Assembly (NCBI GenBank): GCA_965112735.1
Contig: OZ218958.1
Coordinates: forward strand, 3,100,001 to 3,164,000
Length of the DNA stretch: 64,000 bases
Direction of reading: 5' to 3'
Source: Phaeosaccion multiseriatum
Taxonomy: Eukaryota > Protista > Ochrophyta, other classes
The notes under the pieces were generated by a model. It was given only the letters and a program-made list of their open reading frames with translations. It ran no database searches and was not told the DNA's origin. The translations under genes were made by a program, and so were the position numbers. Below, piece by piece: positions 23,173 through 51,587 of this stretch; within the stretch, counting starts at the first letter, position 1, and every line of letters begins with the position of its first letter.

Positions 23173-24575
23173 GAGAGCAATGAGGAGGATATTCTGGAGT
23201 GCGAGCGGTCGTTACTGGCCCTCAGTGTGCTCAGCGGCTACCACAGCGCCCGCCCTGTCCCCGCGGCGGAGGGCGAGGTACTTCCCACGCACCCCCAGGC
23301 CGTGACGTATCAGTACCGCCTGCCCTTCCACGCCCTGCACGCAGATCCTTGGGCAGTGTTGGGACCCCAACTAACGCAGGACTCAGTGGCCAAGCTCGTG
23401 GCCCTGGCTGGGCCGTTACGTCTTGCCGTGGGAGACTTTTACGCCCGTTTGGTGAGGGGCATTGTGGAGCCGTCGTCGTCGGCGGCTACTCCTGCGGTAA
23501 CCTCGAGCAGCTTGAGCGGCAGCAGCAGCAGCAGCAGCAGCAGCGACACAGCCACTCTCAGCAGTGGCGCGGGTGGAAGCACCAGCAGCAGCGGTGGCAG
23601 CTGTGCGAGGGTTTGGCAGCAGGCCTCGCCCTGGCTGGAGAAGATTCGCTGCCCGGTGTTGGCGTGCCGGACCTCGCAGTGGGTGGTGCAGAGACTGCAG
23701 CAGAGAGACGAGCGGTGCGGGCGCATGAGTCCCGCCACGGCAGCGGCACTGGAGCGGGCCATTCGCCATGCAAAGCAGGCGGAAGAGGCTGGCGTGTCCG
23801 CGCTCGCCCTCCTGCTGCTTGGGGGCGACAAGGGCGAGGGGGTTGGTGGGCAGCGGAAAGAGAGCAATAACGGGACGCCGAGAGAGGGCGAGAGCGAGAG
23901 GGAGAGGGAGAGGGGAAGGGAGGAGGGGGAGACTGACACCGATACCGAGGCAATTGTCATGCTGCCTGCTCGTGAGGTGCGTGAGGCGTTGGAGCAGCGT
24001 CTGTTGCGCTTGCATCACGAGCGCGTGCTGAAAGAGAAGCTCGGCTCGGCCTTTGCCGCGGCGATGGCGCCCCTCCTGTCGGCCCCTGCCGAGGAGCTGC
24101 TACGAGCAGTCATGAGCAAGACGGCCCTGAGAGCTGCGCAGAGGGCCGCACCCGCCTGTCTCGCTGCTGACGACCTCCTCCTGCCGGGGGGGCGGGACTC
24201 CTACGGCAGCGATGGCGATGGGGTTGGGATGGCACCTAATGGCAGGGACGTGAGGTCAGGATCAACGAGAGGAAGAGGAGGGGCAGGCACCACAGGTCTT
24301 AGTCTCGGTGGTGGTGGTGGTCGCGAAGGAGGGGAAGGGGCTCCGGGTTGTCGTGTTGGTGTTGCCGAGCCGCCATTCTCATTGGCGGCTTTCCGAGCCG
24401 CTGCACGGAGGTCAGCAGAGGCGGTACAGAGTCTGGCGCAGCAGAGAGGGCTGAGCGTGGCCGCTGTGGAGAAGCTGAGGAGGCGAATGGCTACTTCCTG
24501 GCTCAACCAGGGCCGACAGGGAGGAGGGGGTGGCGGCAGCAGCAGCAGCAGCAGCGGTGGAAGCGGTAGTGGCAG

Positions 24576-24616
<41 letters not shown>

Positions 24617-26425
24617 GCGGCGGCGGCAGCAGTGTAGGAGGGGTGGATGACGGGTGGGTGGGCATGAGTCTCTCCTCGGGGAGCGGGGACTTGCTGGGAG
24701 ACAGCTTCGGCGACAGCGTCTTTACGCCCACCAAGCAGGAAGTGAGGCAGAGGGATAACGTTATAGCGTCGCTGCATGTGGGCTTTCTCTGCTACGGCTG
24801 CCCCGAGGACGCACAAGAGGACGGCGATAGTGCCGATAGTGCCGATAGTGGCGATGGTGGCGCCGCCCACAGAGACAAGAGTGATGGCCCTGCTCCGGGT
24901 AAGACGAAGACGACGACGACTACTGCTGCTGCTGCTGCTGTACCACCAACTGGTGCTGCTACTGGTGGTAGACTATGGGGGCAGCTGGAGTTCCTGCTTT
25001 CGCGTGCGCTGGATGAAAGCGGGCGTCTCGGCTACACCTCGAGGCTGCGAGCGCTCGGCGCCGCGGCGGTCATGGCGGCCCCGCCTCTCGTGCATGCCGT
25101 CTATCGCAGCACTCAGCGCTACGGCCCCAGCCTGTCCAGCCTGGCGAGGCATGTCACCTACCTGGCCAGCGTGGAAGAGCTCCGTTTGCCTCTGCAGCTG
25201 GACTCGATGGTGTCGTGTGACAAGGCGGACTTGGTCAGGGCTCTGTGGCGCGACCATCGCGAGGAAGCTTCTTTGCTTCCCCTCTTGTGCGACATGCTGT
25301 TGGACTGTGCGTGCGGTGACTTGACCCTGTGGGAGCCCATTCTCTCGCGTATGGCCGGGCGGTATGGTCAGCACCGCACCCTCCTGCTGCGCGTGCTTCC
25401 TCGCCTCGTGCGCTCCCCTGCCCTTGCTGCACTGGTCCGAGCCGACGGCGGCGGATCACCAAGCGGCGTCGGAGGAACTGGGGGAGTGGCTAGGCGTAAC
25501 CGTCGTAACGGCAGCAGCAGCAGCGGCGGCGGCGGCGGTAGTGGTAGTGGTAGCAGTAGTTGTGGTGGGCACACGTACAGCGAAGGCAGTGGCGGAGGTG
25601 GGGGAGGGAGACTCGCTACGCTTTGGGAAGCAGTGCTCCGTAAGCCGCTGGAGGAGCTTCAGCAGCGGTTGGAGCGACAGAAGAAGGCGCAGGGCTTGAC
25701 CTCTGCAGCGGTAGCGGCTAAAACGGCAGCGGCGGCGGCAGCGGCAGAGGCCACGACGAGCAGCACCGGTAGCTCCTCTCTCTCCTTCAGTGCCTCGCTC
25801 TTTATGGGAGGCGGAGGAGGGGAGGGAGGAGGAGGGCTGCGTGTAGGTAAGGGCATACAGCAGCACAAACAGGAGCAGCAGCACAACAAGGAGAACTTGG
25901 GGGGCGGTAATCAGGCCCAACCAGCCCAAGTTGTTGCAGAGGCAGGCGAGTCCCCAGGGGTGCTTGGTGTCGAGGGCAGCAGCAGCAGCAGAAGCGGCGA
26001 CCCCAAGACGAGGGAAAGAGAGCAACAGGAACAGCAGTTGGTGGTACAGCAGCAGACGACGACGATTGCAGGGCTGCCCAAGGCGTCCGTACTTCCCGTC
26101 TTGGAGAGCGTTGTGCAGCTCCTGCGCTGCAGTCCCTTCCTGGCCGGGATGGCAGCCAATGGTGTGGAGTGGTTCACCACCGCCCTTATGCAGTTGGGCA
26201 GCCCCTGCGTTCACAGCCTGGCGACTGCAGCGGCGCTGAGTGTGCCCTCACCCCGAGGGCGACTGTCGGTGCTGGTGCAGCGGGTGGTGAAGGGCGGGGC
26301 GGGGCTTGTTGCGGTCATGGATCTGCTTGCAGGGGCGGAGCTCGTGGAGCCCCCAGCGCCGCAGGAAGTGTCTCAACAGGTGCGTGTGGGCGGGCAGGTG
26401 TGTGTGTGTGTGCGTGCGTGTGTCG

Positions 26426-26461
<36 letters not shown>

Positions 26462-26942
26462 GTAGGGGGAGACACGTCGCCTTTATACTCAAGCTGTTCG
26501 TCTGCTGTTGTCCGCACCCTGTTCCACCCCACACCATCCACACAACAACCCCCAGGCGGCCGTGGATCTACTCGGAGGGGCCAAGAGCAGTGAGGCGCTC
26601 CTCCAGGGTCTGTTTGAGTACGTTGACTCGCACAAGCTGTGGCTTGAGCTGCGGCCCGCACCTCGGCACTTTGACTCGCTGGTCAAGTGGCTGGTGCGGC
26701 GGCGCGGACGGGTGTCAGGACTGGTGAAGTTGTGCCTGGACATGGGGAGGGTGGCAGAGGCGCAGGGCCTCGTCAGGCTGCATTGCAAGCACCACCATGG
26801 CAGGGGGGCGATGCAGCAGTTGGTGATACAGCAGAATGGCGGCGCTGCTGCTGGTCCAGAGGGGAGTGGGGGCGGTGATGATGAGGTGATGATGGCAGCG
26901 TTTTGCGCAGAGTTTGGCATCCACCGCGTACAAGAGGCCTGA
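14677..26942 (+). CDS. KNTC1: Kinetochore-associated protein 1 / Rough deal (RZZ complex), 8 exons, ~3,598 aa
   Basis: Exons 14677-15411, 15655-16422, 16608-17786, 17999-19220, 19444-19580, 19756-21345, 21601-26379, 26556-26942 join in frame through GT-AG introns. Motifs: propeller-like LVVGDSSGKLHF; RLKVLLLRGLFEQGLRLAREHGMD; LAFRVMDRVQSPELLP; IDCPLAMGYLLSLP; Rod_C-like YRLPFHAL..DPWAVLGPQL. Confidence 0.85.
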
Positions 26943-28161: not shown

Positions 28162-29373
28162 TCATCGGCCGTCATCAATTCGGTTGAGCCACTTCTTGGC
28201 CACTTCATAGGCTGTCCAGGACACCGCCACGGAGGGACTGCTCACCAAGAGCCGCGGCACCACGCCCCTCATAAATCCCCTCGCCCCCTCCTTGGCATAG
28301 ATCTGCTTGGCCGCATCCGCCAGCCCTGCGTACTGAAAGTGTAACGGCTGCTGTGCCGCCGCCTCCTTGGGACACGTGGCTGCCCTACACCACGCCACCT
28401 TGCCCCCTGCGGCGGCCACTGCCGCAGAAGAGCTGTGCATACTTGCCAGGGTGGCATGCTGAATGGCGGGTTGTTTCAGCATGCCTCCCACCACCCCTAC
28501 CTTCTTGGCAGCTGCTGAAGCGGCCGTCCCTGCCGCCCCTGCCACCTGCGCCGCAGTGCCCGTGGGGGGACCGACGGTTCTCCTCCCCGCCACAACGTCC
28601 CTCACGACCCGAAAGTCGCCCAACGCCCCCGACCTTCCTCCGACGACGCCCCCGACCCCTGAGGTTTGAAAGTGGTGTGCCTGGGCATAAAGGGCCTGTG
28701 TCTGCAGCCGTGTTTTGATGACATCGAGGGGGTTGGTCACGCCCGCCGCCACCGCCCCGGCCCCAGAGCCTGCGATCATGAAGTGGTGTGTCTTCAAGTC
28801 GCTGCCATCTGCAGGCCGGAGCACCTGCTTGAGGCTCTCGTTGACCGCCACCATGACGCACCCGTAGGGGATGTTCATAAAAAGCGTGGTGGGGAAGGAG
28901 AGGAAGAAGGCGCCAAGGCCTTCACTGCGGTACACATTCCTGGCACAATCGGCAATACCCGTGTAGTAGCCAAGCTGCAGCCGCTGCTTGATGACATCCA
29001 TTGGAGTCATTATGGCATCGTGCAGTACCGTAGCCACGGCCCCTGCCGCGGCAGCTCCCAATGGGTGATGGCCCGGGTGATTCACGCCGAACTGAATCTT
29101 GCACTGCTCTAGTGCGCTAAAGTAGAGGGCGTGGGCCGGGATGCACCCTGTCAACATGGTGCTCACGCCCCTCCACAGCCGAATCATGCCCGAGTTGCGC
29201 ACCATGTCGAGTAAGTGGCGCTCGGGGCATGTGACACACTGCACGTGCGTCTTGATGGTGTCGATGGGGAACATGACAGTGTGCTCGCTGATGCCCGCGA
29301 TACTGCCCGCGATGCAGTGGTGAAGGAAGTGCCCCTGCTCGGGGTCCCAGTCCTCCCAATCAAGGTCCCCCAT
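28162..29373 (-). CDS. Mitoferrin (MRS3/4, SLC25A28/37-type mitochondrial iron carrier)
   Basis: Three PxDxxKxR-type carrier signatures (PIDTIKTH, PMDVIKQR, PLDVIKTR); mitoferrin-type AGISEHTVMFP, PAHALYF, LHDAIMTP, MNIPY; intronless. Confidence 0.92.
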   Translation of the reverse strand: MGDLDWEDWDPEQGHFLHHCIAGSIAGISEHTVMFPIDTIKTHVQCVTCPERHLLDMVRNSGMIRLWRGVSTMLTGCIPAHALYFSALEQCKIQFGVNHPGHHPLGAAAAGAVATVLHDAIMTPMDVIKQRLQLGYYTGIADCARNVYRSEGLGAFFLSFPTTLFMNIPYGCVMVAVNESLKQVLRPADGSDLKTHHFMIAGSGAGAVAAGVTNPLDVIKTRLQTQALYAQAHHFQTSGVGGVVGGRSGALGDFRVVRDVVAGRRTVGPPTGTAAQVAGAAGTAASAAAKKVGVVGGMLKQPAIQHATLASMHSSSAAVAAAGGKVAWCRAATCPKEAAAQQPLHFQYAGLADAAKQIYAKEGARGFMRGVVPRLLVSSPSVAVSWTAYEVAKKWLNRIDDGR

Positions 29374-39231: not shown

Positions 39232-39888
39232 GGGAGAGGAGGGGAAAGAGAGGAGGAGAGAGGGGGTTAAGTGAAGGAGAGAGAAGAGGACAGAAGAAGA
39301 GAAGGGTTGAGTAAAGGAGGGGTGCAGCTCTCCGTCTCTCTCTGTAGCTCCGCCTTGCACAAGAGAGCAGCGCTGCGCTTATCGATCGGCGATGAAATCG
39401 GACTCGTCTGGTACCATCGACCGAAGAACGCAGCGAATGCGGCGGGTAGGCGGGTAGGTGGGAGGGGGGAGGGAGGAAGTTGGCTGAGGAAGTGGGCTGG
39501 CAACGAGGTTCGTGCTGCTGAGGAAGATGAGGAAGGCTAGAGAGGGAGTGGGGCAAAGGCAAGGGAAGGTGTGGCGAAGGTGGCAGGAGGACGTCCTCGA
39601 CGCTAAGAAGAATAGACAAAACAGTCTTTCAACTGTCTAAGATATAACACGTTCATTCTCTTCCAATTTCTCAATATTCTCCGTTCCTACTGTGATTTCG
39701 CGGTTGAGCGGCACTTTTGACGCCCCGTGAATTTTTTATGACGCCAAATGACGATTACTTTGACGACGTTTGACGACTTTTTGAACTTTTTGAACCCCTT
39801 TTTTACCCACTTTAAAGCCCTATTTGACGCACTTTGACGCCCTTTGAAGCCGTCATCTGGCAGCATCGGCTCGTCGTCGTCGTCGTCG

Positions 39889-40839
39889 TCCTCCTCCTCC
39901 TCCTCCTCCTCCTCCTCCTCCTCCTCCTCCTCCTCCTCCTCCTCCTCCTCCTCCTCCTCCTCCTCCTCCTCCTCCTCCTCCTCCTCCTCCTCCTCCTCCT
40001 CCTCCTCCTCCTCCTCCTCCTCCTCCTCCTCCTCCTCCTCCTCCTCCTCCTCCTCCTCCTCCTCCTCCTCCTCCTCCTCCTCCTCCTCCTCCTCCTCCTC
40101 CTCCTCCTCCTCCTCCTCCTCCTCCTCCTCCTCCTCCTCCTCCTCCTCCTCCTCCTCCTCCTCCTCCTCCTCCTCCTCCTCCTCCTCCTCCTCCTCCTCC
40201 TCCTCCTCCTCCTCCTCCTCCTCCTCCTCCTCCTCCTCCTCCTCCTCCTCCTCCTCCTCCTCCTCCTCCTCCTCCTCCTCCTCCTCCTCCTCCTCCTCCT
40301 CCTCCTCCTCCTCCTCCTCCTCCTCCTCCTCCTCCTCCTCCTCCTCCTCCTCCTCCTCCTCCTCCTCCTCCTCCTCCTCCTCCTCCTCCTCCTCCTCCTC
40401 CTCCTCCTCCTCCTCCTCCTCCTCCTCCTCCTCCTCCTCCTCCTCCTCCTCCTCCTCCTCCTCCTCCTCCTCCTCCTCCTCCTCCTCCTCCTCCTCCTCC
40501 TCCTCCTCCTCCTCCTCCTCCTCCTCCTCCTCCTCCTCCTCCTCCTCCTCCTCCTCCTCCTCCTCCTCCTCCTCCTCCTCCTCCTCCTCCTCCTCCTCCT
40601 CCTCCTCCTCCTCCTCCTCCTCCTCCTCCTCCTCCTCCTCCTCCTCCTCCTCCTCCTCCTCCTCCTCCTCCTCCTCCTCCTCCTCCTCCTCCTCCTCCTC
40701 CTCCTCCTCCTCCTCCTCCTCCTCCTCCTCCTCCTCCTCCTCCTCCTCCTCCTCCTCCTCCTCCTCCTCCTCCTCCTCCTCCTCCTCCTCCTCCTCCTCC
40801 TCCTCCTCCTCCTCCTCCTCCTCCTCCTCCTCCTCCTCC
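39889..40839. repeat. Perfect (TCC)n/(GGA)n tract, ~950 bp
   Basis: Direct observation; preceded by about six TCG units. Confidence 0.97.
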
Positions 40840-41693
40840 TCATCCTCCTCATCCTCCTCCTCGAGCGACTAATCTTATCCATGACTTGACACATATATGA
40901 AACCTAAGACCACCTTTTAGCTTGCTTCCCATGCTCCACTGGATTCATAGCTGGAAAGCAGAGGGACAATGCCCTTTTCCGTTGTGGCTGTGAGATGCAT
41001 ACTCACATAGCTACTACCGTCCGCCGTCGGTTGCTTCCACAAAATACCGCCATAACCACAGCAGCAACCAACGCATCCCATCCATGTGGATCTGCAGGCC
41101 GATGACCATGGAAGGGGAGGGTGGGCCGAGGGACAGGAGCCCGGGTACGACAGCAGCGAGGAGGCCGCCGGCACCACTACCCCCTCGCCACCCCGACGAG
41201 CAGCTGAGGCTGTTGCCCTTTCCGACTCCGGCATCATCAGCGCCAATGGGAGCGGCGACGAGGGCGACAGCAAGCGAGCATCTCCGCCAAAGAAGCAGGG
41301 TGCGGGCGTGGGCGGCTCGTCTGCTCCTGCTGGCCCCCACTCGCTGCAGGAGCTCGAGCTACCTCAAATCGATATCGATACCTTCGATATCGATACCTTC
41401 AATTATTATTAATTACTTCGAAGTATTATACTGAAACAGGTGTGAGTGTGGAGACGACGTTGCGGCCCTCCTCCCTAGCTCGCATTGAGCGGTGGGACCG
41501 TATAGCCTCTTGACGGCGATGGAGGGGGCTGCAGCAGGGTTTCGACCTATTGGCCAAGAGTTGGAGGCCTCGTGTTATGTCTGGTTTAATAGTTGCTTAA
41601 CTTAATCAAATTATATGTCTTCCTGAGACACAATAGAGGCAGACTAAGGACCATTTCAATCTAGTTAGGTCCACTGAAGAAAAAGAGGACGAA

Positions 41694-41924
41694 TGTAAAA
41701 GCGACCTAAGCCGCTTAGACAAGTGGTAACCCTTGATATATTATACGGGATGGAACCCGTTTGCAAGCCCTGCTGCTAGGCTCTCCTTATACCAAGATCA
41801 CCGTTCTGACGTCCTCCTCCACTCAGAATCTACGTAATATAGGACACACCGACCATTGACTTATGGTCCTTCTCACTCTGAGGCCTTCCAACATCCCCAA
41901 TGCCTATCCCGTAACCTTCCAACA
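41694..41924 (-). repeat. 3' LTR (231 bp)
   Basis: Minus strand TGTTGGAAGG...GGTCGCTTTTACA, preceded by purine-rich GGGATAGGCATTGGGGA (PPT-like, 41925-41941). Confidence 0.9.
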
Positions 41925-41969: not shown

Positions 41970-44900
41970 CTAGAACCCCAAATGTTGCGCCGTCTCCGCA
42001 GCGATGCCCATCCCCCACTTCTCGTGCAACATGGCGCGCACGGTGCGCTCTCGTTTAGACCGCTGCCCACGCTTGCGCTGCACGCTCGGGTCCAACGCCC
42101 CTGGCGCCAAAGAGTCCTCGAATGCCTCTATTGCCGCCCTCTCCCCGCGCCGCAAGAGCCAATCGTCCCACTCCCACGTCTGATAACTGCCACCCTCCCG
42201 TACAGCCCAACGTACACAGTACTCACGCCGTAGGGGCTGCCCTGTGGCCTTACGCCACCTCATCTTCACTATCCGCGCCAGCTCGGGCGCCCGCCCTATC
42301 CCAACCTCGTCATCGGTCACGCTCCGCTTCTCCTGCAGTGCACTAGTACCCCAGTGGGCTGAGCAGTACCGGATGTGGTATCGAGCGAACCCATCTGGTA
42401 GTCCTTGCGGCTGGCCACTCACCCCATCAACGAACGGCTTGGTGAGGTCCCTATGGTACGCCCCTTGCTTGAACTCCACTCCCCCGCCTCTGACCCTCGG
42501 CACATCCAGATACACCGTGCTACGGCGCATCACCGCGTAGTGCTCGTCGTTGAGTATGCCACCATGTCGCGCCTGGAAGGCCTGCTGTGTGGGCCAAGCC
42601 AGGACTTGGAACGGTCCGTCCCAAGCATGACTCAGCGCTTTGAGCGTCAGTGCCTTCTGCTCCTCCATGGCCTCACCCTCCTCCTGCGCCACCCCCCCTG
42701 GACGGTACAACCACACCTTAGTGCCAGGAGGCATCGGCGCTGGCCAGCGACGCTCACGGTTCTTGAGCTGTAGCCTGCTGCGGTACTCCTCGCGCCTGCC
42801 CGTCACCACCTGCGCCGCCGCTGCCATCCGCGCCCTCAGCTCGTGCACCCATGCCGAAGGCGTCTCGAACGAGCCGTCCTCCTCGAGGGCAGGCAGCATC
42901 GTTTGAAGTGGAATCGGGGGGTGTCGACCGAAGAGAGTGTAGTACGGGGAGAGGCCTGTGGTCTTGTGAGCTCTGCAGTTGTACGCGTACGTGAGCGCGG
43001 GAACATACTCAGGCCACTGCTGCATCTGGGCCTCCACTGTCGTCGCCAGCATGTCCTTCATCGTGGCCATGAAGCGCTCCACTTGCCCATTGGCTTGCTG
43101 ATGCATCGGCGTAGTGAAGACTTGTGATGTCTGGAGTACGCGCAGCACATCGGCCATGAGCGTGCTCGTGAACTGCGACCCTTGGTCACTGACCAGCACC
43201 TTGGGCGCCCCCAGCACCGTCACTACGTGCCGCACGAATGCCCGAGCAATGCCCTCCGCTGTATAGTCCTTGGCGCACAATGGCACCACCACTGTCCATT
43301 TGGTGAACCAATCTTGAAACACCAAAATGTACTCCTCCCCCCCCATGGCCATGGGGAAAGGTCCTGCCACGTCAGCACCCATAACCGCCCATGGCCCATT
43401 CACAGCCGCCGATGATATGGACGAGAGCGGAACCTGTGGAGGTCGCCTCCGTGGTGTCTTGCGTGTCTGGCACGCAAGACATGAACGGGCCCAGTACAGC
43501 GCATGCCCGTTCATGGAGGGCCACCACACTCGCTCCTGCAGCGCATCCAGCATCCGCCCTGGCCCGTGATGGCCGCCTGAGACCGCATCGCCGTGCGTGG
43601 CATGCAGTAGGGCCGGCCTGAGCGCCTTGGGGACGCAGAGCTGCAACCTCGTTCGCTCTACCCGCCACCGTCGCCCCCCGGGGGCCCACTTGCGGCGAAG
43701 GACGCCATCGCCATCGAGAGAGAACTCTCCCCCGCCCGCATCGAACACCCCCTCGCCCGGGGAGGCTGCCAAGACCTTCTGACGCCACCCCTCCAACTCA
43801 GCGTCCTGCTGCTGCGCCTTCACCCACCACGCGGGCTGGTAAGTCCGAGCCCCATGCAAGATGCGGGCTGCGCACGACTGCTCACCCACTGCCGGGGGAA
43901 CACCAGGGAGGGACCACCCAAATTGCCGCGTAGCAGCCTGCCTTGCGGCCTCCACGTCTGCCAGCGCTGCTGCCTCGCTCGCCGCAGCCGCATGGGCATC
44001 GGTGTCAGCCGCTGGAGTCGCTCCAGCCTCTCGTCCCTCCACCCCCGTGGCCGAGCCGCCAACTGTGAGTCCGCCGCCTCCTCCTCCTCCTCCTCCGCCT
44101 CCTCCTCCTCCTCCTCCTCCTCCTCCTCCTCCTCCTCCTCCACCTCCGCCGCTGCCGCTGCCGCCGCCTTCAACCCCTCCTCCGCCGCCTGCACCACCCG
44201 CACCGTCACCGCCGCCGGCTGTGGCGGCTGCTGGGGCCGCGGTCGGTGTGCGCTCCGCCTCCACCGTCGATGCACCCACCACGCCCGCGGCCTCGACGGC
44301 GGCAGGGATGTCCCACGCCACACCTTGGGTTTGCCACTGCTGCTGGGCCTCTGTGGGGGTCACCATGGTGTAGTAGCCGCCCGTATCTGCGGCGATGGCA
44401 CTCCACGTCTTCTCAATCATAACCGCTCGAGGTAGTGACAGCTTGCCACGCCTCCGCGCCGCGGCCGGCCGATAGCGCGCCCTGAACTGCTCCACTGCGT
44501 CCATGAGCTCCGTCCAGGTCCACTGGGGATGTCGGTAAGAAAGAAGGATCAGGTCAATCATCTCCACTGACTTAGCGGTCGCTGAGAAAATGAAGAGTGG
44601 ACTGGCGTGCTCCCGATCGGCCCAATACCCCACCCCGGCAGAGACGAACTGTCCTGCGCGCATCTCAGCACGCGTCACACCCGCCACCCCGCTATCCACC
44701 GCGCTCACTTCCATCGCAGACGGCACCGGAACTGCACAAGCCCGCATCTTCGGCAGCAGCTGTAGTAATGCGGCCACATCGTCGAAGGCATAGCTGAGCT
44801 GGGCCGCAGTGAGCTCCCGCTGAGTCCAATCCGTCTTCTGCTCCTCCTTGCTCATAAAACGCTGCAGGAACATACTAACCAGGTCTGCTAAGCCAATGGG

Positions 44901-47033
44901 ACGGCAGTGCTCAGGCCACACCTCCTTGAATAAATGCGTCGTGTCGACCAAGTTGGCGATGGTCCACACATGCGGCGCCAACGCCGGCCACTTCCCTAGG
45001 GCACGCTGGTCGTGACTCCAGTGATGCGCCAGCTTCATAATCCCCCCGTCGCCCCACAGCTCACTCAGCACCGCCGCCAGCGCCTCCATACCACCATTGC
45101 CACTCAAACTGTCCAAATCCACCCAAAACCCACAATCACGCTCCGAATTGGCGACGCCGCTATACTGAACACCCAATTGCAGCAGAGACGCCGGCCGAGG
45201 AGGAGTGCGTATAGCCCACTCCGAGTCCATGGCCACCACTGTCGCCTCCCGCAGTGCCGCTCGCATGTCCCACACCTGCTCCTCCGTGCGTATGTACGTG
45301 CACCGCGCTGCTGGCACGTGGCTGAGAAACAGCGGCAGCTGAGACCACTCCTCTATCACCCGTTTCTTCTCGTTGATGTGGGACAGGGTCACTGGAGCCC
45401 AGCCACATTGCCGCATCTGCTCCACGTGCTGCAGCCGAGCCGACCCGAAGCCGCCTGGCGCCTCGACCGCCACACTGTCCACGCACAGCGCCTCCAAACC
45501 TGCCGACGCCTGCTGTCTCGCCGTGACCGACGAGAGTCCCTCCATAGGCACTGACTGAGCCGCCACCGCCTCCCCTTGCAACTGCTGCGCCGCGGCAGCA
45601 AACCGCAGCACCGCACCTTCCACCGGATCCTCCCACCCTAACGCGAGGGTGTCACCCACCACATCCACCAACGCCACCTCCACTCCCACCGCATCACACC
45701 ACTCAGTCACTGGCAAGGGGTCGCGTGACAAGCAGTCAGGCACCACAAGCTCCCGCCCCGGTTTGTGGACAAACTTGAGATGATGAGCAGAGAGCCGTTC
45801 ATACCACCGAAAGAGCTTGGAGTTGGTGTCCTTGTGAGTCGCCAGCCACAGCAAGGGTTGGTGGTCCGTCACCACCGTGCAGGGATGGTGGCAAATGTAC
45901 ATGCTCAACTTGCGCACACACCAAACCACCGCCAAGAGCTCGAGCTCCGTACTGCCTAGCCGAGCCTCCGTGGGGGTAGTGGCACGACTGATGAACGTCA
46001 CGACTCGCTCCACCCCCTCGGCATCCCGCTGCGACAGCACACCCCCTAACCCGTCTGCTGAAGCGTCGGTGCTGAGCGTGAACACCGATTCCGAGCCATA
46101 GTGAGGGAAGGCCAACGCGGGCGAGCGGAGCAGGTCCTCGATGAGCCCCTCCCACGCCGCGTCGTGCCTCGGCCCCCACGCTGACCGCACATCCACCCCT
46201 TTGCGCAAGAGCTCATTGAGCGGCCGCACCTTCATGGCAAACGCCGGAATGAATTTGCGGAAGTAGCTGAGCATGCCTACAAAGCGCCTGACCTGTCGCA
46301 CCTGATTGCCTGACTGCGCAGTGGGCTTGGCCAGCGCTCGAACTGCTGCATACTTGGCTGGATCGGCCCGCACCCCCTCACTATCCACCAAATGCCCACA
46401 GAAGCGCACCTGAGATGCCCCCAACACCACCTTGCTCGGCGCCAGCTTGAGCTTGTGCTGCACCATCCTGCCGAGAACTTGGTCTAACTGGCCAATGTGC
46501 TGATCCACCGTGGCGGAGAAAACTGCAATGTCGTCCACGAAGCACGCCACGAATGCCTGTAGGCCCTGCAACACCGTGTTCATAAGGCGTACGAACGTGG
46601 CGGGTGCATTCTTCGCTCCTTGTGGCATGACTCTCCAGGCGTACGTGCCACTGTGGCAGACAAATGTAGAGATGTCCTCATCCTCCGTGGTGGCCATGGG
46701 CACATTGAAGTAGCCAGACATGATGTCCATCACCGAAAAGACCGTAGACCCCTGCATTTCCGCCAGCAAATCATCCACCACTGGCATGGCGGGCGCCTCC
46801 GTGCGGCACGCGTCATTGAGCTGCGACAGGTCACACGTCATCCGCACGATCGGAGTGCCGTCCTCGTGGCACTTGGTGTTGCCGTGCTCGTCCGTCTTCA
46901 ACACGGCCATGAGTGGAGTGGCCCAGGCTGCTGTGCTGGGCCGGATGATCTCTGCTGCTAGCATCTTGTTCAACTCAATCTCAATACCGCGCCGGACCGG
47001 AGGAGGGACACACGACCTAAGCCGCTTAGACAA
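41970..47033 (-). CDS. pol: Pol: reverse transcriptase, RNase H, DEDDy 3'-5' exonuclease, unknown domain, integrase, chromodomain
   Basis: RT: DIMSGY, MPQGAKNAPATF, FVDD. RH: TDASADGLG, ELELLAV, TDHQPL, PDCLSR. Exonuclease: DSEW, HDQRAL, YAFDD. IN: H..H..CLAC, DVAGP, SDQGSQF, NGQVERF, WDGPFQV. Chromo: EYCVRW...TWE. Confidence 0.92.
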   Translation of the reverse strand: MSKRLRSCVPPPVRRGIEIELNKMLAAEIIRPSTAAWATPLMAVLKTDEHGNTKCHEDGTPIVRMTCDLSQLNDACRTEAPAMPVVDDLLAEMQGSTVFSVMDIMSGYFNVPMATTEDEDISTFVCHSGTYAWRVMPQGAKNAPATFVRLMNTVLQGLQAFVACFVDDIAVFSATVDQHIGQLDQVLGRMVQHKLKLAPSKVVLGASQVRFCGHLVDSEGVRADPAKYAAVRALAKPTAQSGNQVRQVRRFVGMLSYFRKFIPAFAMKVRPLNELLRKGVDVRSAWGPRHDAAWEGLIEDLLRSPALAFPHYGSESVFTLSTDASADGLGGVLSQRDAEGVERVVTFISRATTPTEARLGSTELELLAVVWCVRKLSMYICHHPCTVVTDHQPLLWLATHKDTNSKLFRWYERLSAHHLKFVHKPGRELVVPDCLSRDPLPVTEWCDAVGVEVALVDVVGDTLALGWEDPVEGAVLRFAAAAQQLQGEAVAAQSVPMEGLSSVTARQQASAGLEALCVDSVAVEAPGGFGSARLQHVEQMRQCGWAPVTLSHINEKKRVIEEWSQLPLFLSHVPAARCTYIRTEEQVWDMRAALREATVVAMDSEWAIRTPPRPASLLQLGVQYSGVANSERDCGFWVDLDSLSGNGGMEALAAVLSELWGDGGIMKLAHHWSHDQRALGKWPALAPHVWTIANLVDTTHLFKEVWPEHCRPIGLADLVSMFLQRFMSKEEQKTDWTQRELTAAQLSYAFDDVAALLQLLPKMRACAVPVPSAMEVSAVDSGVAGVTRAEMRAGQFVSAGVGYWADREHASPLFIFSATAKSVEMIDLILLSYRHPQWTWTELMDAVEQFRARYRPAAARRRGKLSLPRAVMIEKTWSAIAADTGGYYTMVTPTEAQQQWQTQGVAWDIPAAVEAAGVVGASTVEAERTPTAAPAAATAGGGDGAGGAGGGGGVEGGGSGSGGGGGGGGGGGGGGGGGGGGGGGGGGGLTVGGSATGVEGREAGATPAADTDAHAAAASEAAALADVEAARQAATRQFGWSLPGVPPAVGEQSCAARILHGARTYQPAWWVKAQQQDAELEGWRQKVLAASPGEGVFDAGGGEFSLDGDGVLRRKWAPGGRRWRVERTRLQLCVPKALRPALLHATHGDAVSGGHHGPGRMLDALQERVWWPSMNGHALYWARSCLACQTRKTPRRRPPQVPLSSISSAAVNGPWAVMGADVAGPFPMAMGGEEYILVFQDWFTKWTVVVPLCAKDYTAEGIARAFVRHVVTVLGAPKVLVSDQGSQFTSTLMADVLRVLQTSQVFTTPMHQQANGQVERFMATMKDMLATTVEAQMQQWPEYVPALTYAYNCRAHKTTGLSPYYTLFGRHPPIPLQTMLPALEEDGSFETPSAWVHELRARMAAAAQVVTGRREEYRSRLQLKNRERRWPAPMPPGTKVWLYRPGGVAQEEGEAMEEQKALTLKALSHAWDGPFQVLAWPTQQAFQARHGGILNDEHYAVMRRSTVYLDVPRVRGGGVEFKQGAYHRDLTKPFVDGVSGQPQGLPDGFARYHIRYCSAHWGTSALQEKRSVTDDEVGIGRAPELARIVKMRWRKATGQPLRREYCVRWAVREGGSYQTWEWDDWLLRRGERAAIEAFEDSLAPGALDPSVQRKRGQRSKRERTVRAMLHEKWGMGIAAETAQHLGF

Positions 47034-47235
47034 GTGGTAACCCTTGATATATTATACGGGATGGAACCCGTTTGCAAGCCCTGCTGCTAGGCTCTCCTTA
47101 TACCAAGATCACCGTTCTGACGTCCTCCTCCACTCAGAATCTACGTAATATAGGACACACCGACCATTGACTTATGGTCCTTCTCACTCTGAGGCCTTCC
47201 AACATCCCCAATGCCTATCCCGTAACCTTCCAACA
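47013..47235 (-). repeat. 5' LTR (223 bp, lacking the last 8 nt of U5)
   Basis: Appears identical to 41702-41924 and is fused directly to RT-coding sequence. Confidence 0.9.
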
Positions 47236-47309
47236 CGAAGGACGCATCGTTTGGTGGGAGGCAAGCACCATTTCCTCCCGTGTGTTCGTGTGGGACTTAT
47301 GACAGGCGA

Positions 47310-47452
47310 TCAGACTTGCACGAAGCCATCTGCCATCTGACTGTCTCCATCGTCGTCTTCCTCGTTGGCAGCTAGGGCCGGGTCTCCTATAGCACCACCA
47401 CCACCACCACCACCACCACCACCACCACCACCACCACCACCACCACCACCAC

Positions 47453-47506
<54 letters not shown>

Positions 47507-49095
47507 TGTTGTTGGCTTCTTGCGCCGAAGAGGGCAGTAAAACAAGTCCGGGCGGGAACGGGTTGAGGTCCGGCACGTTGATGTTGCTCATCCTGCAGAC
47601 CTTGTGGAGGAACTTGAAGAAGAAGCTCTGGAAGGAAACCACGCGGTCGCCGAAGCCCGGCGATGACTTCGATGCTGGCTTGGGATACTTCCTCCACAAT
47701 TCCACTCCCCTCTTTGGCCTCATCTGGTCTTCTTCTTTGTTGAAAGTACAGAGAAGTTGGTCTCCAAGTGAAAAGACCGGCAACCCCTGTTTGGAGGCGG
47801 CAACGAACATTCCGATGGACACAGCCAGCACAAGGAAGGGAGGGCGGGGTCAACATTGAAGGTGACGGAATCCGAATCATGCTTACTTGACTTACATAGA
47901 ATTGCGTGCTTGCAACGAGCTGTGTGAAGTCCGGAATAGACGCCAGCACTTGCAGACCTTCTGTAGGTACCATGTCGGCGAGCTGGGCATCCTCCCGAAG
48001 AAGCTGTGTTGCTTGCTGAAGCATCCCCTGGATTCGCTGTATCCAAAAGTTGAAATTGGCCGCCGGTGTCAGGCCCGAGTGTGTGTACCGCAGGATCGTG
48101 ATGCCCAAGATTTTGGGTTTTCCTGCATTTGTGATGCGGAAATCCTCCGGAATGGCCCGTGTATCGGCCGACATTCGGACCGCCCTGTCATGATCCGTCT
48201 TCCAGGACTTAATGAGACTCGGTAGACCAAAGAGGGCGTTGTAGCAGTAGAAGTCCGGAGAGCAGGGGAGGATGACAAAGTCGCTGTGCATGATAATGTG
48301 CCTGTTCATCCAACCAGTGGACGGATTGCAGTCTAGGACGACTACATCGGCCTTGACACTCTTGGCTGTGAGATCGATCAGATAGTTCCAGGCACCCGGG
48401 GCGTTCGTTTCAATATGGAATCCGGAGCCATACGCCAGTCCGACTTTCTCCTCGAATTTGATGATGCCTTCGTGACCAGGGAGAAGAAAGAGGGCACCGT
48501 CCTCGTGTCCCGAAGGCTCCCCGTTATGGATCATGATTTGGGTCACGTCTGCAGCTTGGATCCCGACGCCCGGAGTGCCACTCGCTTGCACCACCGGCTC
48601 AAGACAATCCCTTAAGTTGTTCTTTAGATTGAGATCCGTGCCACTCTTGTAGAACATGTTGAATCCAAGTCCGGTGAACTTGAAGGGCGGAGGATTTTGT
48701 TCACCGGCATGCTCAAGCGCCCACGCCTGTCGCTCCAGCTCCTCACAGTGGGTACGAAGAAGCATGAAGCTCAAATCGCACTGCGGGTCAGCATCCACTA
48801 AAAGGACGCGAAGTCCTTTAGATGCCAAACCTACGGCAAGGCCATGGGCCAACGTGGTCTTGGATGTACCGCCCTTGCGCTGATACATGGACATGATCTT
48901 GGCCTTGTGACCAGGGGGTCGATCAACATGTACTCCCTCCACCGGGTTCTGTACTGGGAACACTGCAGTTGCAGGTTGATCGCTTCGGGGGAAAACAAAC
49001 GTCTCGGCGCGCGGTGGAAAACCACCACCTGCACGACCAGGCTCCTCCAGCAGCTCTTGGATGTTCCTTACACCCCCATCTTGCATTGCCGCCAT
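47310..49095 (-). CDS. ParA/Soj/MinD-family ATPase (bacterial type) with one spliceosomal intron
   Basis: Deviant Walker A RKGGTSKTT, VLLVDADPQCDLS, VVLDCNPS, SDFVILPCSPDFY. Removing intron 47787-47895 (GTAAGT...CAG) gives IPDFTQLVASTQFY|GLPVFSL; stop at 47310. Confidence 0.85.
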
Positions 49096-51587
49096 GACAG
49101 CACAACTAGCCTGCTGAGGAAAGGAGGGGCACAGGAAACGTTGGAGCAGGCAAGTGAACTTGTTCTTGCTCTGAGGGAAGGGAGAACAAGCAACAAGGAG
49201 CGACAAGGAAATTTAGGCAGCATTGGCTGATAACAAACCTCCTCGTCCACTTCCTTCAACCTCTTCTTTCAAGCTTCGCCTCTCCCTGTCCCTGTGTGTG
49301 CTTGAGTTCTCTCTTTTGTTGCTGCGCTGACTTCCGCGGCATCTTTTTCTCCGGGGAGTTTCGTCAAGTTGGTTTCGTTGTCGGGACAACCAAAATGTAG
49401 ATGGAAGGATTCGCAAAGCGAAACGTTTAATTGACTTACTATTAGGGGTTTAAAGTTTAAAGTTGAATCTGTTAGAACGTAGGAGCTTGATAAGCTCATC
49501 TTCTACACTCCTTGCAGCTCCTGCAGACAACTGTCCAGTGTGGCGGCGTGGCCGGCTGCTCTATGAGCTACAAGGAATCTCTTTTGACGAAGTTCGAGCC
49601 GGAACAGCAGGGGGGGGGGAGCCGAACTGGGGAGGTACTGCGCGCGGCGGAGGACTCCAGCTGCTCAGTAATGGCGCGGTACGATGCAGGAACGTCGCGA
49701 CGACGCTTGGGACATGGCCGTTCTCCCCATTTCCGGCTGTGTGTACCATCTGCTGACTGCTGACTGTACTGTCGCTGACGCTCATGGTTTGGACCCCTAC
49801 TTCTCGTCTGTACTGCGAGTATGCAGACGCACTTGATGCAGTCTGCGACAGGGCTGTTTGAATACCTGTGGAGCGTGGCGAATGGAGACCGTGTGCCTTT
49901 GCCAGGGTCGTGATACGAGGCTAAGGACTTTTCGCGGCAGAGAAGGTGGAAGCAAGATAAAGAAGAGAAGAGAGAGGAAGAGAAAGGGTAGTGTTGCGCA
50001 GAGAAGGGCCAGGAGATTGACCATCGGGACGGGCATGTCAGCGCTACTGGTGGGCGTGGAGAATCCGCGCCGGACCAGGTCGTCGGCCGGGGGGGGCAGT
50101 GAGCTGGGATGGCGAAGAGAAATCGGCAGGAGGACGACGTAACAGGGGACCAAGCGCCTCGCGCGACCAGTGGAGGCCTCATAATACATTGTAATGCGAA
50201 AAATATCCAGTTGCTGTTCACGCCGTCCTCTGACTTGACCCTCTTGATAGGGGCCAAAGTATCACCCACTTCGGGTCGAATGAGCTCAACCACTATCGCG
50301 AGCTCGACCTTCCAAGCAAGAGCAAAATTGAAGTGGTGGGGTCCGTCAGCAGAAGCAATTAAACTGCACAAACAATACAGAGGGTGATGGCTTGCTTCTC
50401 CCGCTTGGCAGGCTCGCTCGCCTGCTGCCCCCTCCATCTCGCCCCCCGCTTCTCACTAAGAGGAGTGGGTATTCGAGGCGACAGACAGAGACACTTGCGC
50501 TTGAGCACGGAGGCCGTTGCCTAGGGGCGGTGTATGTCAGAGCTTATGATCTCGGAGTACGGGAATTGAAGCAACTGGAGAATGTGATGGTTAGGGGGAA
50601 GGCTAGGTGAGATGCTCGCATCGAAACGGCCCCTCGGCCTCATGGAACGAGAGTCAAGCTTCCGCCCGGCGAGAGGCCTTAGAGTACATAGGACACACAC
50701 GGAGAGTGAGGATCTTTGTACGCCTTGTCTCCCCATCGCCATCTTCATCTGGCTTCGCTCTTCGCTCTGAAGAACCGCGCGTACGTGCTTTGTGTCTCTC
50801 CCCATTCATTTCGGCTCCTCAAGTCGTCGTCTCCAGCTCTACTCCTCCCCTCTGTCTCCGGCACCAACCTCGCTCATCTTGCGCGGGACTTGTGGGGGGC
50901 CTTGCAAGAGCGCCTTGACGCCGACCTGACACCAGCAGCCACCAGCAGCAGTTCTGGTGACGTGTCTTACTACGATGGCTCAGGCACGTGGTACGGTGGC
51001 TCCAGTTCCAGTGTTGTGATGGATGGGAAAAGTCACCGCGACACGAACTGGCCCTTTTCAAATATCATCGGAGTAGTCATCAGTCAAGTATCAAGTTGAG
51101 GATCAAACAGGCCGCACACGTGGTCACGCAGTACGGGCGGAGGGAGGGGAGAGACCGGGGGGGGGGTGAGTCGGGCGGTGGCGGCAGAGGCAGCCGACGA
51201 GAGCCTCAGACCATGAAGCAAGGCCCAATATATAGCACTTCGAAGACTATGTAGGCAGATGAAGTCACGAAGGCAGGAAGAGCACCAGCGTACGAGCGTG
51301 ACGAGGGAGTTGGGAGGAGCTTCGAAAATTGGAATGCTTCGGGCGGGTGTGATCATTGATTTGATGCTGCCCACATGGTGCCCCAAAAGGAAAGCATTTG
51401 ATGGAGAAACGCGTCGCCGGGGCAAGCTCGGCAGGAGCGAGGGACTGCCCTCTCTACGACCACACAACAAAGAGGGCGAAGAGCCTAGGTACCCAAGGGG
51501 GAAGTGAGGATGGAGACTGGACAGATGGCAGAAGATCGGGGTTGGCTATCCCGCGCTACCACCATTGGCTGCCCTCGCCCCCCTTCC

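What the first reader, a model, noticed from the sequence alone, without database searches (positions are those of the whole stretch)
44750..45320. Ty3/gypsy Pol with an in-frame DEDDy 3'-5' exonuclease (Mut-7/EXD/WRN-exo type) between RNase H and integrase
Seen: in the uninterrupted 1,687-aa pol ORF, RNase H (PDCLSR) is followed by VVAMDSEW...ASLLQLG...KLAHHWSHDQRAL...LVDT...GLADLVSMFLQRFMSKEEQKTDWTQRELTAAQLSYAFDDV, and only later by the HHCC-integrase. ExoI (D,E), ExoII (D) and ExoIII (Y,D) residues are all present. Established: this is the DNA_pol_A_exo1/DEDDy family (Mut-7/Nibbler, EXD1-3, WRN exo, RNase D); standard gypsy Pol has no such domain and LTR-element RTs lack proofreading; Mut-7/Nibbler/EXD1 act in small-RNA silencing of transposons. 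Inference: a captured nuclease that may proofread or trim cDNA ends, or trim/degrade host small RNAs as a counter-defence. I know of no described lineage with this layout but cannot search for one.
Basis: partly seen in the sequence, partly recalled or inferred. Interest (0 to 1): 0.9.

Follow-up and report, generated by a model that had tools for sequence, protein, structure and literature searches.

The report
Gypsy retrotransposon with built-in exonuclease
A recently active, unusually large jumping gene of a brown-alga-related microalga carries, fused inside its replication protein, an extra and apparently working 3'-to-5' nuclease that selection has preserved. This raises the testable idea that a reverse-transcribing element trims or edits its own nucleic-acid ends.

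Summary
The 1,687-aa minus-strand ORF (window 41970-47033) reads RT, RNase H, DEDDy 3'-5' exonuclease (Pfam PF01612, E 6e-15, Pol aa 579-764 = window 44742-45299), then integrase. All five catalytic residues are present: D603, E605, D675, Y748, D752. The AlphaFold model (pLDDT 92) best matches Nibbler/Mut-7, then WRN-exo, Rrp6 and RNase D.

The window copy is defective. Its 5' LTR is joined straight to RT, deleting about 8.4 kb (gag, protease). Intact copies are 12.5-13.9 kb, with identical LTRs, 4-bp target duplications and polyproteins up to 3,195 aa.

Two families (RT 80% identical, exonuclease 57%) share the layout, about 30 copies in all. The exonuclease is under purifying selection (dN/dS about 0.1; P about 1e-8).

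No Pol with this layout turned up among the best-scoring proteins listed from searches of 5.8 and 1.84 billion proteins, or in the paper library. DEDDy exonucleases are, however, already known as separate ORF3s in bdelloid rotifer LTR elements and Terminons (Rodriguez et al. 2017). I therefore call it a new variant of a known kind.

Function is inferred: most likely 3'-end trimming or editing of the element's own replication intermediates. The scan found the same thing on other copies in this genome (s1-343230, s1-336280).

The parts
41970..47033 (-). Open reading frame of 1,687 aa: RT, RNase H, DEDDy exonuclease, poly-Gly spacer, integrase and a C-terminal tail. It is the truncated Pol of a family-1 element.
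46392..46814 (-). Reverse transcriptase core (Pfam RVT_1, Pol aa 74-214)
   Evidence: E 3e-25
45789..46178 (-). Ty3/gypsy-type RNase H (RT_RNaseH_2 / RT_RNaseH, aa 286-415)
   Evidence: E 4e-29
44742..45299 (-). DEDDy 3'-5' exonuclease domain (PF01612, aa 579-764). ExoI is D603/E605, ExoII is D675, ExoIII is Y748/D752.
44070..44150 (-). GGN repeat coding a poly-Gly run (aa 962-988) in the spacer between exonuclease and integrase. The spacer is poorly conserved between the families.
43455..43634 (-). Integrase HHCC zinc-binding domain (aa 1134-1193)
   Evidence: E 9e-15
43104..43376 (-). Integrase catalytic core (rve, aa 1220-1310; 31.3 bits, just under the Pfam cut-off of 32.6)
41694..41924 (-). 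3' LTR, TG...CA. The canonical 200 bp is 41893 to 41694. In this copy it is preceded by a 31-nt duplicated extension that is also present in the 5' LTR.
47013..47235 (-). 5' LTR, 100% identical to the 3' LTR over 223 nt but lacking its last 8 nt. Five filler bases (47008-47012) join it directly to the start of RT. The primer-binding region, gag and protease are deleted.
47236..47239 (-). Target-site duplication TTCG (upstream copy)
41690..41693 (-). Target-site duplication TTCG (downstream copy)

Best explanation
The finding is a genuine, selectively maintained DEDDy 3'-5' exonuclease domain built into the Pol polyprotein of a young, giant (12.5-13.9 kb) Ty3/gypsy-order LTR retrotransposon lineage of an ochrophyte (brown-alga-related) alga. 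It is translated as part of PR-(spacer)-RT-RNaseH-Exo-(spacer)-IN, so it should be packaged with RT and integrase in the replication particle. The two-metal carboxylates (D, E, D, D) and the general-base Tyr are intact. It should therefore hydrolyse single-stranded 3' ends.

My preferred mechanism is that it works on the element's own replication intermediates. It could remove mispaired or non-templated 3' nucleotides from nascent cDNA or primers. It could also clear short RNA oligonucleotides left by RNase H, so that strand transfers and integration of a very long cDNA succeed.

Shown: the domain's identity, its position, its catalytic motifs, its fold, multi-copy conservation in two families, purifying selection, and recent activity of the elements. 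Inferred: that it is catalytically active, that it is packaged, and what its substrate is.
For: Pfam PF01612 hit well above cut-off in family 1, family 2 (E 1e-20) and a full-length 3,195-aa polyprotein.

All five DEDDy residues are invariant between the families at 57% identity, and invariant or nearly invariant (D675 in at least 90% of rows) in a 40-sequence alignment.

The AF2 model has pLDDT 92. Foldseek's best match is the Nibbler EXO domain (E 1e-11, TM 0.7), followed by Rrp6, RNase D and WRN exo.

About 30 element copies carry the domain without stops, inside open frames of up to 3,303 aa.

Unsaturated dN/dS in the exonuclease between family-1 sublineages is 0.11 (23 synonymous vs 9 nonsynonymous changes) and 0.08 (24 vs 7), with binomial P of 8e-9 and 3e-10 against neutrality. 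Between the families, omega is 0.20 for the exonuclease, 0.37-0.45 for the flanking linkers and 0.04-0.10 for RT/RH/IN.

Full-length copies have 0-1 LTR mismatches and 4-bp target duplications, so the lineage was active very recently with the domain in place.

No present-day host gene is a close donor.

Phmmer's best solved relatives are RNase D, diDNase and NanoRNase C, enzymes that trim or degrade short 3' ends and oligonucleotides.
Against: No biochemical or expression data exist. The public runs that hold the element are contigs with no RNA record.

Nothing computed here separates DNA from RNA substrates.

The best structural neighbour (Nibbler/Mut-7) is a small-RNA trimmer, which fits the counter-defence rival as well.

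The exonuclease evolves faster than RT or IN (96% vs 98.6-99.6% identity between sublineages).

Large LTR elements without any exonuclease exist (plant Ogre; own knowledge), so size does not require editing.

The flanking linkers could not be modelled, so the geometry relative to the RT active site is unknown.
Confidence: 0.5

Rival explanations
1. Counter-defence. The exonuclease trims or degrades host small RNAs (siRNA-like guides or their precursors) that target the element. It would act like a hijacked Mut-7/Nibbler-type RNA trimmer.
For: The best structural match is the Nibbler EXO domain. In the tree, the element clade lies inside a well-supported set that contains all Mut7-C-bearing proteins among the hits. 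The host genome has an Argonaute/Piwi gene, so small-RNA silencing is possible. The host has no Mut7-C domain protein of its own.
Against: The domain is locked inside Pol between RNase H and IN, so it is expected to be confined to particles with the element's own nucleic acids. It has no Mut7-C or other small-RNA-pathway partner domain. Subfamily placement is weak: the stem is long, and the best sequence hits in the PDB are RNase D, diDNase and NrnC rather than Mut-7. There are no small-RNA data.
Confidence: 0.15
2. True proofreading. The exonuclease edits RT misincorporations in cis, as nidovirus ExoN or Pol I exo do. This lowers the error rate and permits the unusually long 12.5-14 kb genome.
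For: The domain sits directly downstream of RT-RNase H in one polypeptide. The elements are about twice the usual Ty3/gypsy size. The PF01612 family includes the Pol A proofreading domains. DEDDy ORFs also occur in giant Terminons (PMC6431247).
Against: Much of the extra length is low-complexity poly-E and poly-G spacer. No structural model of an RT-Exo interface could be obtained. No LTR-element RT is known to proofread (own knowledge). No measure of fidelity is available from the sequence.
Confidence: 0.15
3. A catalytically dead or irrelevant passenger. The domain would be retained only as a structural or RNA-binding spacer (like EXD1, Maelstrom or Egalitarian), or not yet lost.
For: The bdelloid DEDDy ORF3s showed no significant departure from neutrality and have DEED rather than DEDD (PMC5408684). 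The exonuclease evolves faster than RT or IN here.
Against: All five catalytic residues are kept in two families whose synonymous sites are saturated. dN/dS of about 0.1 is highly significant. The flanking linkers, not the exonuclease, are the fast-evolving parts.
Confidence: 0.07
4. Artefact. The domain would be a host exon, or a nested insertion of another element, mis-joined into pol by assembly or by chance.
For: None found. The only oddity is that the window copy is rearranged at its 5' end.
Against: The same uninterrupted frame occurs in about 30 copies on at least ten contigs and in two families. Contigs from runs of two separate studies cover the region. The 5' rearrangement lies about 1.7 kb from the domain.
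Confidence: 0.01

Closest known systems
DEDDy-type exonuclease ORF3 of bdelloid rotifer LTR retrotransposons (Juno, Vesta) and of Athena/Terminon Penelope-like elements (Rodriguez, Kenefick & Arkhipova 2017, PMC5408684; Arkhipova & Yushenova 2019, PMC6431247)
   Same: In both cases a retroelement has acquired an RNase D/WRN/Mut-7-type DEDDy 3'-5' exonuclease. Both are associated with large or complex retroelements. Function is unproven in both.
   Different: In bdelloids it is a separate ORF3 downstream of pol; here it is an in-frame Pol domain between RNase H and integrase. In bdelloids the motif reads DEED and neutrality was not rejected; here DEDD-Y is intact and dN/dS is about 0.1. The host is a rotifer there and an ochrophyte alga here. 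Common ancestry of the two exonuclease sets was not tested, because no bdelloid sequences were on hand.
Mut-7 / Nibbler / EXD3, WRN exonuclease, RNase D and Rrp6 (cellular PF01612 DEDDy enzymes)
   Same: Same Pfam family, same five catalytic residues and same fold (Foldseek E 1e-11 to 1e-9, TM 0.6-0.7). The element clade sits in the part of the tree that holds the Mut7-C proteins.
   Different: There is no Mut7-C, HRDC or helicase partner domain. Identity to any cellular protein is only 20-30%. The clade sits on a long stem. The domain is embedded in a retroelement polyprotein.
dUTPase encoded in pol between RNase H and integrase in non-primate lentiviruses (own knowledge), and dUTPase in some LTR elements
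   Same: An accessory nucleic-acid or nucleotide-metabolism enzyme is inserted at the same RH-IN junction of Pol and delivered with the replication machinery.
   Different: The enzyme is different (nucleotide hydrolase vs exonuclease), and there is no sequence relationship.
Nidovirus nsp14 ExoN and arenavirus NP exonuclease (DEDDh), cited in bioRxiv 10.1101/2021.02.01.429129 (abstract seen)
   Same: A replicating RNA-templated genetic element has captured a DEDD-superfamily 3'-5' exonuclease. There is a possible link to large genome size or to evasion of host sensing.
   Different: Those are DEDDh rather than DEDDy. They belong to RNA viruses with an RdRp rather than to a reverse-transcribing element. 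Their function is experimentally shown; here it is not.
Tf1/sushi group of Ty3/gypsy elements (self-priming; own knowledge)
   Same: There is no tRNA-type primer-binding site. The 8-9 nt right after the 5' LTR are complementary to a site inside the LTR about 30 nt downstream of a TATA-like box, and the pairing covaries between the two families.
   Different: The pairing is only 8-9 nt. In family 1 the minimum-energy fold prefers a local hairpin. The transcription start is unknown. No chromodomain was detected. Tf1/sushi elements have no exonuclease.

Membership tests
DEDDy 3'-5' exonuclease (Pfam PF01612, DnaQ-like/RNase D-WRN-Mut-7 group) | Profile match above the curated threshold | tested here: met
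   55.9 bits against a cut-off of 23.6, E 6e-15. Family 2 scores 74.7-75.1 bits.
DEDDy 3'-5' exonuclease (Pfam PF01612, DnaQ-like/RNase D-WRN-Mut-7 group) | ExoI D-x-E, ExoII D and ExoIII Y-x3-D catalytic residues | tested here: met
   D603, E605, D675, Y748 and D752 are present. They are invariant between the families; in the 40-sequence alignment four are invariant and D675 nearly so, at 90% or more of rows.
DEDDy 3'-5' exonuclease (Pfam PF01612, DnaQ-like/RNase D-WRN-Mut-7 group) | RNase H-like alpha/beta fold superposable on solved DEDDy domains | tested here: met
   AF2 pLDDT 92 and pTM 0.87. Foldseek matches Nibbler 7jw2, WRN 2fbx, RNase D 1yt3 and Rrp6, all at probability 1.00.
DEDDy 3'-5' exonuclease (Pfam PF01612, DnaQ-like/RNase D-WRN-Mut-7 group) | Metal-dependent 3'-5' exonuclease activity | not testable with these tools
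   This needs a biochemical assay.
Mut-7 / EXD3 / Nibbler subfamily | Exonuclease domain accompanied by a Mut7-C (PF01927) domain, or robust placement inside that clade | tested here: inconclusive
   There is no PF01927 in Pol. The element clade lies within a 97%-supported set of 42 rows that contains all 8 Mut7-C proteins in the tree, but on a long stem and without a resolved sister. The host genome has no PF01927 match.
Ty3/gypsy (Metaviridae) LTR retrotransposon | Domain order PR-RT-RNase H-IN with gypsy-type RT_RNaseH and Integrase_H2C2 profiles | tested here: met
   PR is supported only by a weak Pfam hit and D-T/S-G motifs.
Ty3/gypsy (Metaviridae) LTR retrotransposon | Direct LTRs ending TG...CA, a polypurine tract, and short target-site duplications | tested here: met
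   LTRs are 200 bp (family 1) and 196 bp (family 2), TG..CA. 4-bp TSDs are TTCG, ATGC, ACGC and GCAG. A purine run lies before the 3' LTR. The one family-2 copy examined showed no TSD.
Ty3/gypsy (Metaviridae) LTR retrotransposon | Gag with a capsid or zinc-knuckle signature | tested here: inconclusive
   The upstream ORFs have no significant Pfam match. The only signal is a CCHC knuckle at E 0.44.
Chromovirus branch of Ty3/gypsy | Chromodomain at the C-terminus of integrase | tested here: not met
   The C-terminal tail looks chromodomain-like by eye. However, Pfam gives no hit even at E up to 1, and a PDB sequence search finds no chromodomain.
Bdelloid-type retroelement DEDDy module (Juno/Vesta/Athena ORF3) | Separate ORF3 downstream of pol | tested here: not met
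   Here the domain is in-frame inside Pol, between RH and IN, in every intact copy.
Bdelloid-type retroelement DEDDy module (Juno/Vesta/Athena ORF3) | Shared ancestry of the exonuclease sequences | not tested
   No bdelloid ORF3 sequences were available through the tools.
Tf1/sushi-type self-priming elements | A primer-binding site adjacent to the LTR and complementary to the 5' end of the transcript | tested here: inconclusive
   Complementarity of 8 nt (family 1) and 9 nt (family 2), with covarying flanks and the right distance from a TATA-like box. The fold supports the pairing in family 2 only. The transcription start is unknown.

The most novel reading that the evidence does not exclude
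A reverse-transcribing element with genuine editing. The Pol-embedded DEDDy exonuclease would remove RT errors or non-templated 3' nucleotides in cis. That would make this the first LTR retrotransposon lineage with a proofreading-like replicase, and would help explain how 12.5-14 kb elements with 3,200-aa polyproteins stay intact. It would be a retroelement counterpart of nidovirus ExoN.
Probability: 0.15. Interest if true: 0.9.

Novelty: new variant of a known kind. Interest (0 to 1): 0.65.

Why it matters
Reverse transcriptases of retroviruses and LTR elements are textbook examples of polymerases without proofreading. A lineage that has fused an intact, selected 3'-5' exonuclease next to RT-RNase H offers a natural system for three questions. 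Can retroelements edit or trim their cDNA? Does such an activity relax the size limits on retroelement genomes? Or have transposons turned a Mut-7-like nuclease against host small-RNA defence? It also shows that capture of DEDDy exonucleases by retroelements is not confined to bdelloid rotifers. It has happened in a distant eukaryotic lineage and with a different gene architecture, which argues for a recurrent selective benefit. The domain is compact (about 190 aa), models confidently, and has clear active-site residues to mutate, so the question is directly testable.

Tried and rejected
1. A word-indexed search of 5.8 billion proteins, restricted to the exonuclease region with Pol-length candidates, found nothing. 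With the whole Pol as query, the 120 best Pols were at most 39% identical and none carried PF01612.

2. An HMMER profile search of 1.84 billion representatives found one close relative only, P0001. It is 186 aa at 41% identity, on a 917-bp metagenome contig with no informative flanks. Of the hits longer than 800 aa among the best 150 listed, I scanned 14 with Pfam (nine, five). All were cellular architectures: Mut7-C, tRNA_edit, ankyrin or exonuclease alone. None had RT or IN. At least seven further hits of that length in the list were left unscanned (among them P0057, P0060, P0091, P0122, P0123, P0134, P0149). Of 1,268 significant hits, only 150 were visible.

3. The metagenome contig scan gave two loci at 30% identity, which I did not pursue.

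4. A feature search of the ESM Atlas with RT-RH-Exo returned only ordinary RT/RNase H clusters.

5. Folding the RH-linker-Exo-linker segment (496 aa) gave low confidence outside the exonuclease core, so no extra domain such as HRDC could be called.

6. A chromodomain was suspected by eye at the C-terminus but is not supported.

7. No host donor gene was found. No cellular gene of this genome matches the element's exonuclease at E 0.01 or better.

8. Public runs gave contigs only, with no RNA record. They therefore say nothing about expression, and short-read contigs break at repeat borders.

9. Between-family dS is saturated. I therefore relied on within-family sublineage comparisons. The family-2 comparisons had too few changes in the exonuclease, and uneven dS across domains suggests recombination.

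10. A tRNA-type primer-binding site was rejected: no TGG motif follows the LTR.
Full report
**Observation**

The window holds one long minus-strand ORF, 41970..47033, of 1,687 aa. Pfam places the following along it:
- RVT_1 at aa 74-214
- gypsy-type RNase H at aa 286-415
- DNA_pol_A_exo1 (PF01612) at aa 579-764, with 55.9 bits against a cut-off of 23.6 and E 6.2e-15
- Integrase_H2C2 at aa 1134-1193
- rve at aa 1220-1310

The five DEDDy residues were checked codon by codon: D603 and E605 (ExoI, VVAMDSEW), D675 (ExoII, HHWSHDQRAL), and Y748 and D752 (ExoIII, SYAFDDV).

**The copy in the window is defective**

A 223-bp direct repeat, 100% identical, lies at 47013-47235 and 41702-41924. It is the LTR. 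The canonical LTR is 200 bp with TG...CA ends, and runs from 41893 to 41694. In this copy it carries a 31-nt extension that is present in both LTRs. The insertion is flanked by a 4-bp target duplication, TTCG.

The 5' LTR lacks its last 8 nt. Five filler bases join it directly to the first residues of RT.

Other copies in the genome share about 8.4 kb more between the 5' LTR and this point. The window copy has therefore lost the primer-binding region, gag and protease by an internal deletion. The deletion most probably happened after integration, because both LTRs carry the same extension yet the 5' U5 end is missing. The '1,687-aa pol ORF' is thus an intact RT-to-IN frame in a non-autonomous copy.

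**The intact element**

The genome is 67 Mb in 22 contigs; the window is contig 9, 3,100,001-3,164,000.

Family 1 has full-length copies of 13.9 kb. One is contig 3, 4,756,862-4,770,747. Three copies have LTR pairs with 0, 0 and 1 mismatches in 200 bp, and 4-bp duplications ATGC, ACGC and GCAG. One copy encodes a single 3,195-aa frame (L029:124-9711). It reads: a poly-Glu region, an aspartic protease (DTGA motif, weak Pfam hit), long poly-Gly spacers, then RT, RNase H, Exo (aa 2084-2269) and IN.

Family 2 has the same layout and a stronger PF01612 hit (E 1e-20). Against family 1 it is 71-73% identical in nucleotides across RT and IN, 80% in RT protein and 57% in exonuclease protein. One copy is 12.45 kb with identical 196-bp LTRs. 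Its protease motif is visible as LMDSGCTG.

A PF01612 scan of the whole genome finds about 30 element copies with the domain, free of stops, inside open frames of up to 3,303 aa. It also finds about 15 unrelated cellular genes.

The next nearest gypsy RTs in the genome are only 37% identical. The exonuclease-bearing lineage is therefore isolated, and the domain was acquired before the two families split.

**Is the domain functional?**

Three lines of evidence say it is maintained.

1. All five catalytic residues are invariant between the families. In a 40-sequence alignment with cellular homologues, four are invariant and D675 is nearly so, at 90% or more of rows.

2. An AlphaFold model built on that alignment is confident (pLDDT 92.2, pTM 0.87). 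Foldseek's best PDB match is the Nibbler (Mut-7 homologue) EXO domain (E 1.2e-11, TM about 0.7). It is followed by Rrp6, E. coli RNase D, WRN exonuclease and EXD2. By sequence, the best solved relatives are diDNase, RNase D and NanoRNase C (E 5e-7 to 1e-3).

3. Selection acts on it.
   - Between the families, synonymous sites are saturated. The order of constraint is still clear: omega is 0.04-0.10 for RT, RH and IN, 0.20 for Exo, and 0.37-0.45 for the flanking linkers.
   - Between family-1 sublineages (dS about 0.19) the exonuclease shows 23 synonymous against 9 nonsynonymous changes, and 24 against 7. That gives omega 0.11 and 0.08. The binomial P against neutrality is 8e-9 and 3e-10.

The domain does evolve somewhat faster than RT and IN.

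**Where did it come from?**

No cellular gene of this genome resembles the element's exonuclease at E 0.01 or better. The genome also has no Mut7-C domain.

In an HMMER search of 1.84 billion representative proteins, the only close relative is a 186-aa fragment on a 917-bp metagenome contig (E 4e-41, 41% identity). The next hits are at E 5e-18 or weaker. They are cellular PF01612 proteins, several with Mut7-C or tRNA-editing domains and none with RT or IN. I scanned 14 of the hits longer than 800 aa among the 150 listed and left at least seven such hits unscanned.

In a maximum-likelihood tree, the two families plus the fragment form a clade (SH-aLRT 99) on a long stem. That clade sits inside a 97%-supported set that holds all eight Mut7-C proteins in the tree, with no resolved sister. 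'Mut-7/RNase D/WRN-type' is therefore right at superfamily level, but the subfamily is unresolved.

**Host**

A mitoferrin gene in the window has its best named relatives in Tribonema, Chrysoparadoxa, Ectocarpus and other brown algae, and Nannochloropsis. The host is therefore an ochrophyte stramenopile alga. It has an Argonaute/Piwi gene.

**Comparison with what is known**

The paper library holds a clear precedent for the general phenomenon. Rodriguez, Kenefick and Arkhipova (2017, PMC5408684) described RNase D-like DEDDy exonucleases as ORF3 of the bdelloid rotifer LTR elements Juno and Vesta, and in Athena/Terminon Penelope-like elements (also PMC6431247). A 2019 opinion paper lists the 'DnaQ-like 3'-5' exonuclease' among accessory domains of LTR elements on that basis (PMC6338049).

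The bdelloid modules differ from this one in four ways:
- They are separate ORFs downstream of pol.
- They read DEED rather than DEDD.
- They did not depart from neutrality.
- They occur in an animal.

I found no paper and no protein cluster with an in-frame RT-RH-Exo-IN Pol. Because gene predictions usually mask transposons, absence from protein databases is weak evidence of rarity.

The same RH-IN junction hosts dUTPase in non-primate lentiviruses (own knowledge), so that junction is a known site for accessory enzymes. I therefore rate this a new variant of a known kind.

**Mechanism**

Shown here:
- an intact two-metal DEDDy active site
- a position in the polyprotein immediately after RT-RNase H
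- purifying selection
- recent activity of the elements

Inferred:
- The domain is packaged with RT and IN, and hydrolyses single-stranded 3' ends of the element's own replication intermediates.
- Within that reading, possible roles are trimming non-templated or mispaired cDNA 3' ends, maturing a primer, or clearing RNase H oligonucleotide products. I give this family of explanations about 0.5.
- Strict proofreading gets about 0.15. Counter-defence against small RNAs gets about 0.15; Nibbler is the best fold match and the host has an Argonaute, but the domain is confined within Pol and has no partner domain. An inactive passenger gets about 0.07, and an artefact about 0.01.
- Nothing computed here distinguishes RNA from DNA substrates.

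**Side observation on priming**

Neither family has a tRNA-type primer-binding site. Instead, the 8-9 nt immediately after the 5' LTR are complementary to a site inside the LTR, about 30 nt downstream of a TATA-like box:
- Family 1: ACCCGTTT pairs with AAACGGGT at LTR position 132.
- Family 2: ACCCGGAAG pairs with CTTCCGGGT at LTR position 125.

The core CGGGT is shared and the flanks covary.

An RNA fold of the family-2 leader pairs these two sites in the minimum-energy structure. In family 1 a local hairpin competes. This resembles Tf1/sushi self-priming and is a lead only. A link to the exonuclease, such as primer 3'-end maturation, is speculation.

**Earlier notes of this scan**

The same architecture was noted on other copies in this genome, and two notes were followed up with concordant conclusions (s1-343230, s1-336280). 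I re-derived their claims independently. I add the 2017 bdelloid precedent, the defective nature of this copy, the unsaturated dN/dS test and the priming observation.

**Limits**

- There is no expression or biochemical evidence. The public runs are contigs with no RNA record.
- The linkers could not be modelled.
- Related eukaryotic genomes could not be searched at the DNA level.

Noticed in passing
L017:994-1001 with 1063-1070 (family 1); L032:2522-2530 with 2594-2602 (family 2); in the window the LTR site is about 41755-41763, minus strand: There is no tRNA-type primer-binding site. The 8-9 nt right after the 5' LTR are complementary to an LTR-internal site about 30 nt downstream of a TATA-like box, and the flanks covary between the two families. 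This resembles Tf1/sushi self-priming. The fold supports it in family 2 only.
   Followed up: partly
window 47215-49206 (minus strand): An ORF upstream of the element has a ParA/MinD-type P-loop ATPase domain (Pfam AAA_31 E 2e-19, CbiA E 3e-12) at aa 103-202. Its C-terminal part is a read-through of (TGC)n(TGG)n microsatellite into the LTR.
   Followed up: partly
window 39834-40890: A long tandem array with a 9-bp period (about 160 registers reported at 94% identity) lies about 800 bp downstream of the element's 3' LTR. It creates spurious ORFs on both strands.
   Followed up: no
G000 contig 14, about 2.30-2.75 Mb: Dozens of full and fragmentary copies of both exonuclease-bearing families pile up in one 450-kb region. 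This could be a centromere-like or heterochromatic TE graveyard, or a preferred target.
   Followed up: no
G000:C10:8220-9431 and G000:C9:3265443-3266570: Other gypsy-type RTs are only 37% identical to this lineage. One lies in an open frame of 4,622 aa and is another giant element that was not examined for accessory domains.
   Followed up: no
window 41894-41924 and 47205-47235: In this copy both LTRs start with a 31-nt duplication of the polypurine-tract end plus the LTR start (TGTTGGAAGGTTACGGGATAGGCATTGGGGA). This suggests an aberrant plus-strand priming or strand-transfer event in the cycle that made this insertion.
   Followed up: partly
window 16278-26727 (plus strand): A KNTC1/Rod kinetochore protein is encoded by intron-poor ORFs, including one of 2,441 aa (ARM_KNTC1_3rd E 3e-25, Rod_C E 5e-9). 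Ankyrin and FNIP-repeat genes lie at 332-8331, and a mitoferrin-like carrier at 28162-29373.
   Followed up: partly
G000:C12:590620-590805 and G000:C1:3715570-3717316: Isolated fragments resemble the element's exonuclease (61% and 91-100% identity) outside full elements. They are probably decayed copies. A domesticated piece was not excluded.
   Followed up: no
L022:7652-7848 / L032:2397-2593: The family-2 copy on contig 10 has identical LTRs but no matching target-site duplication (flanks AACA vs TCCT). This may be a product of recombination between two copies.
   Followed up: no
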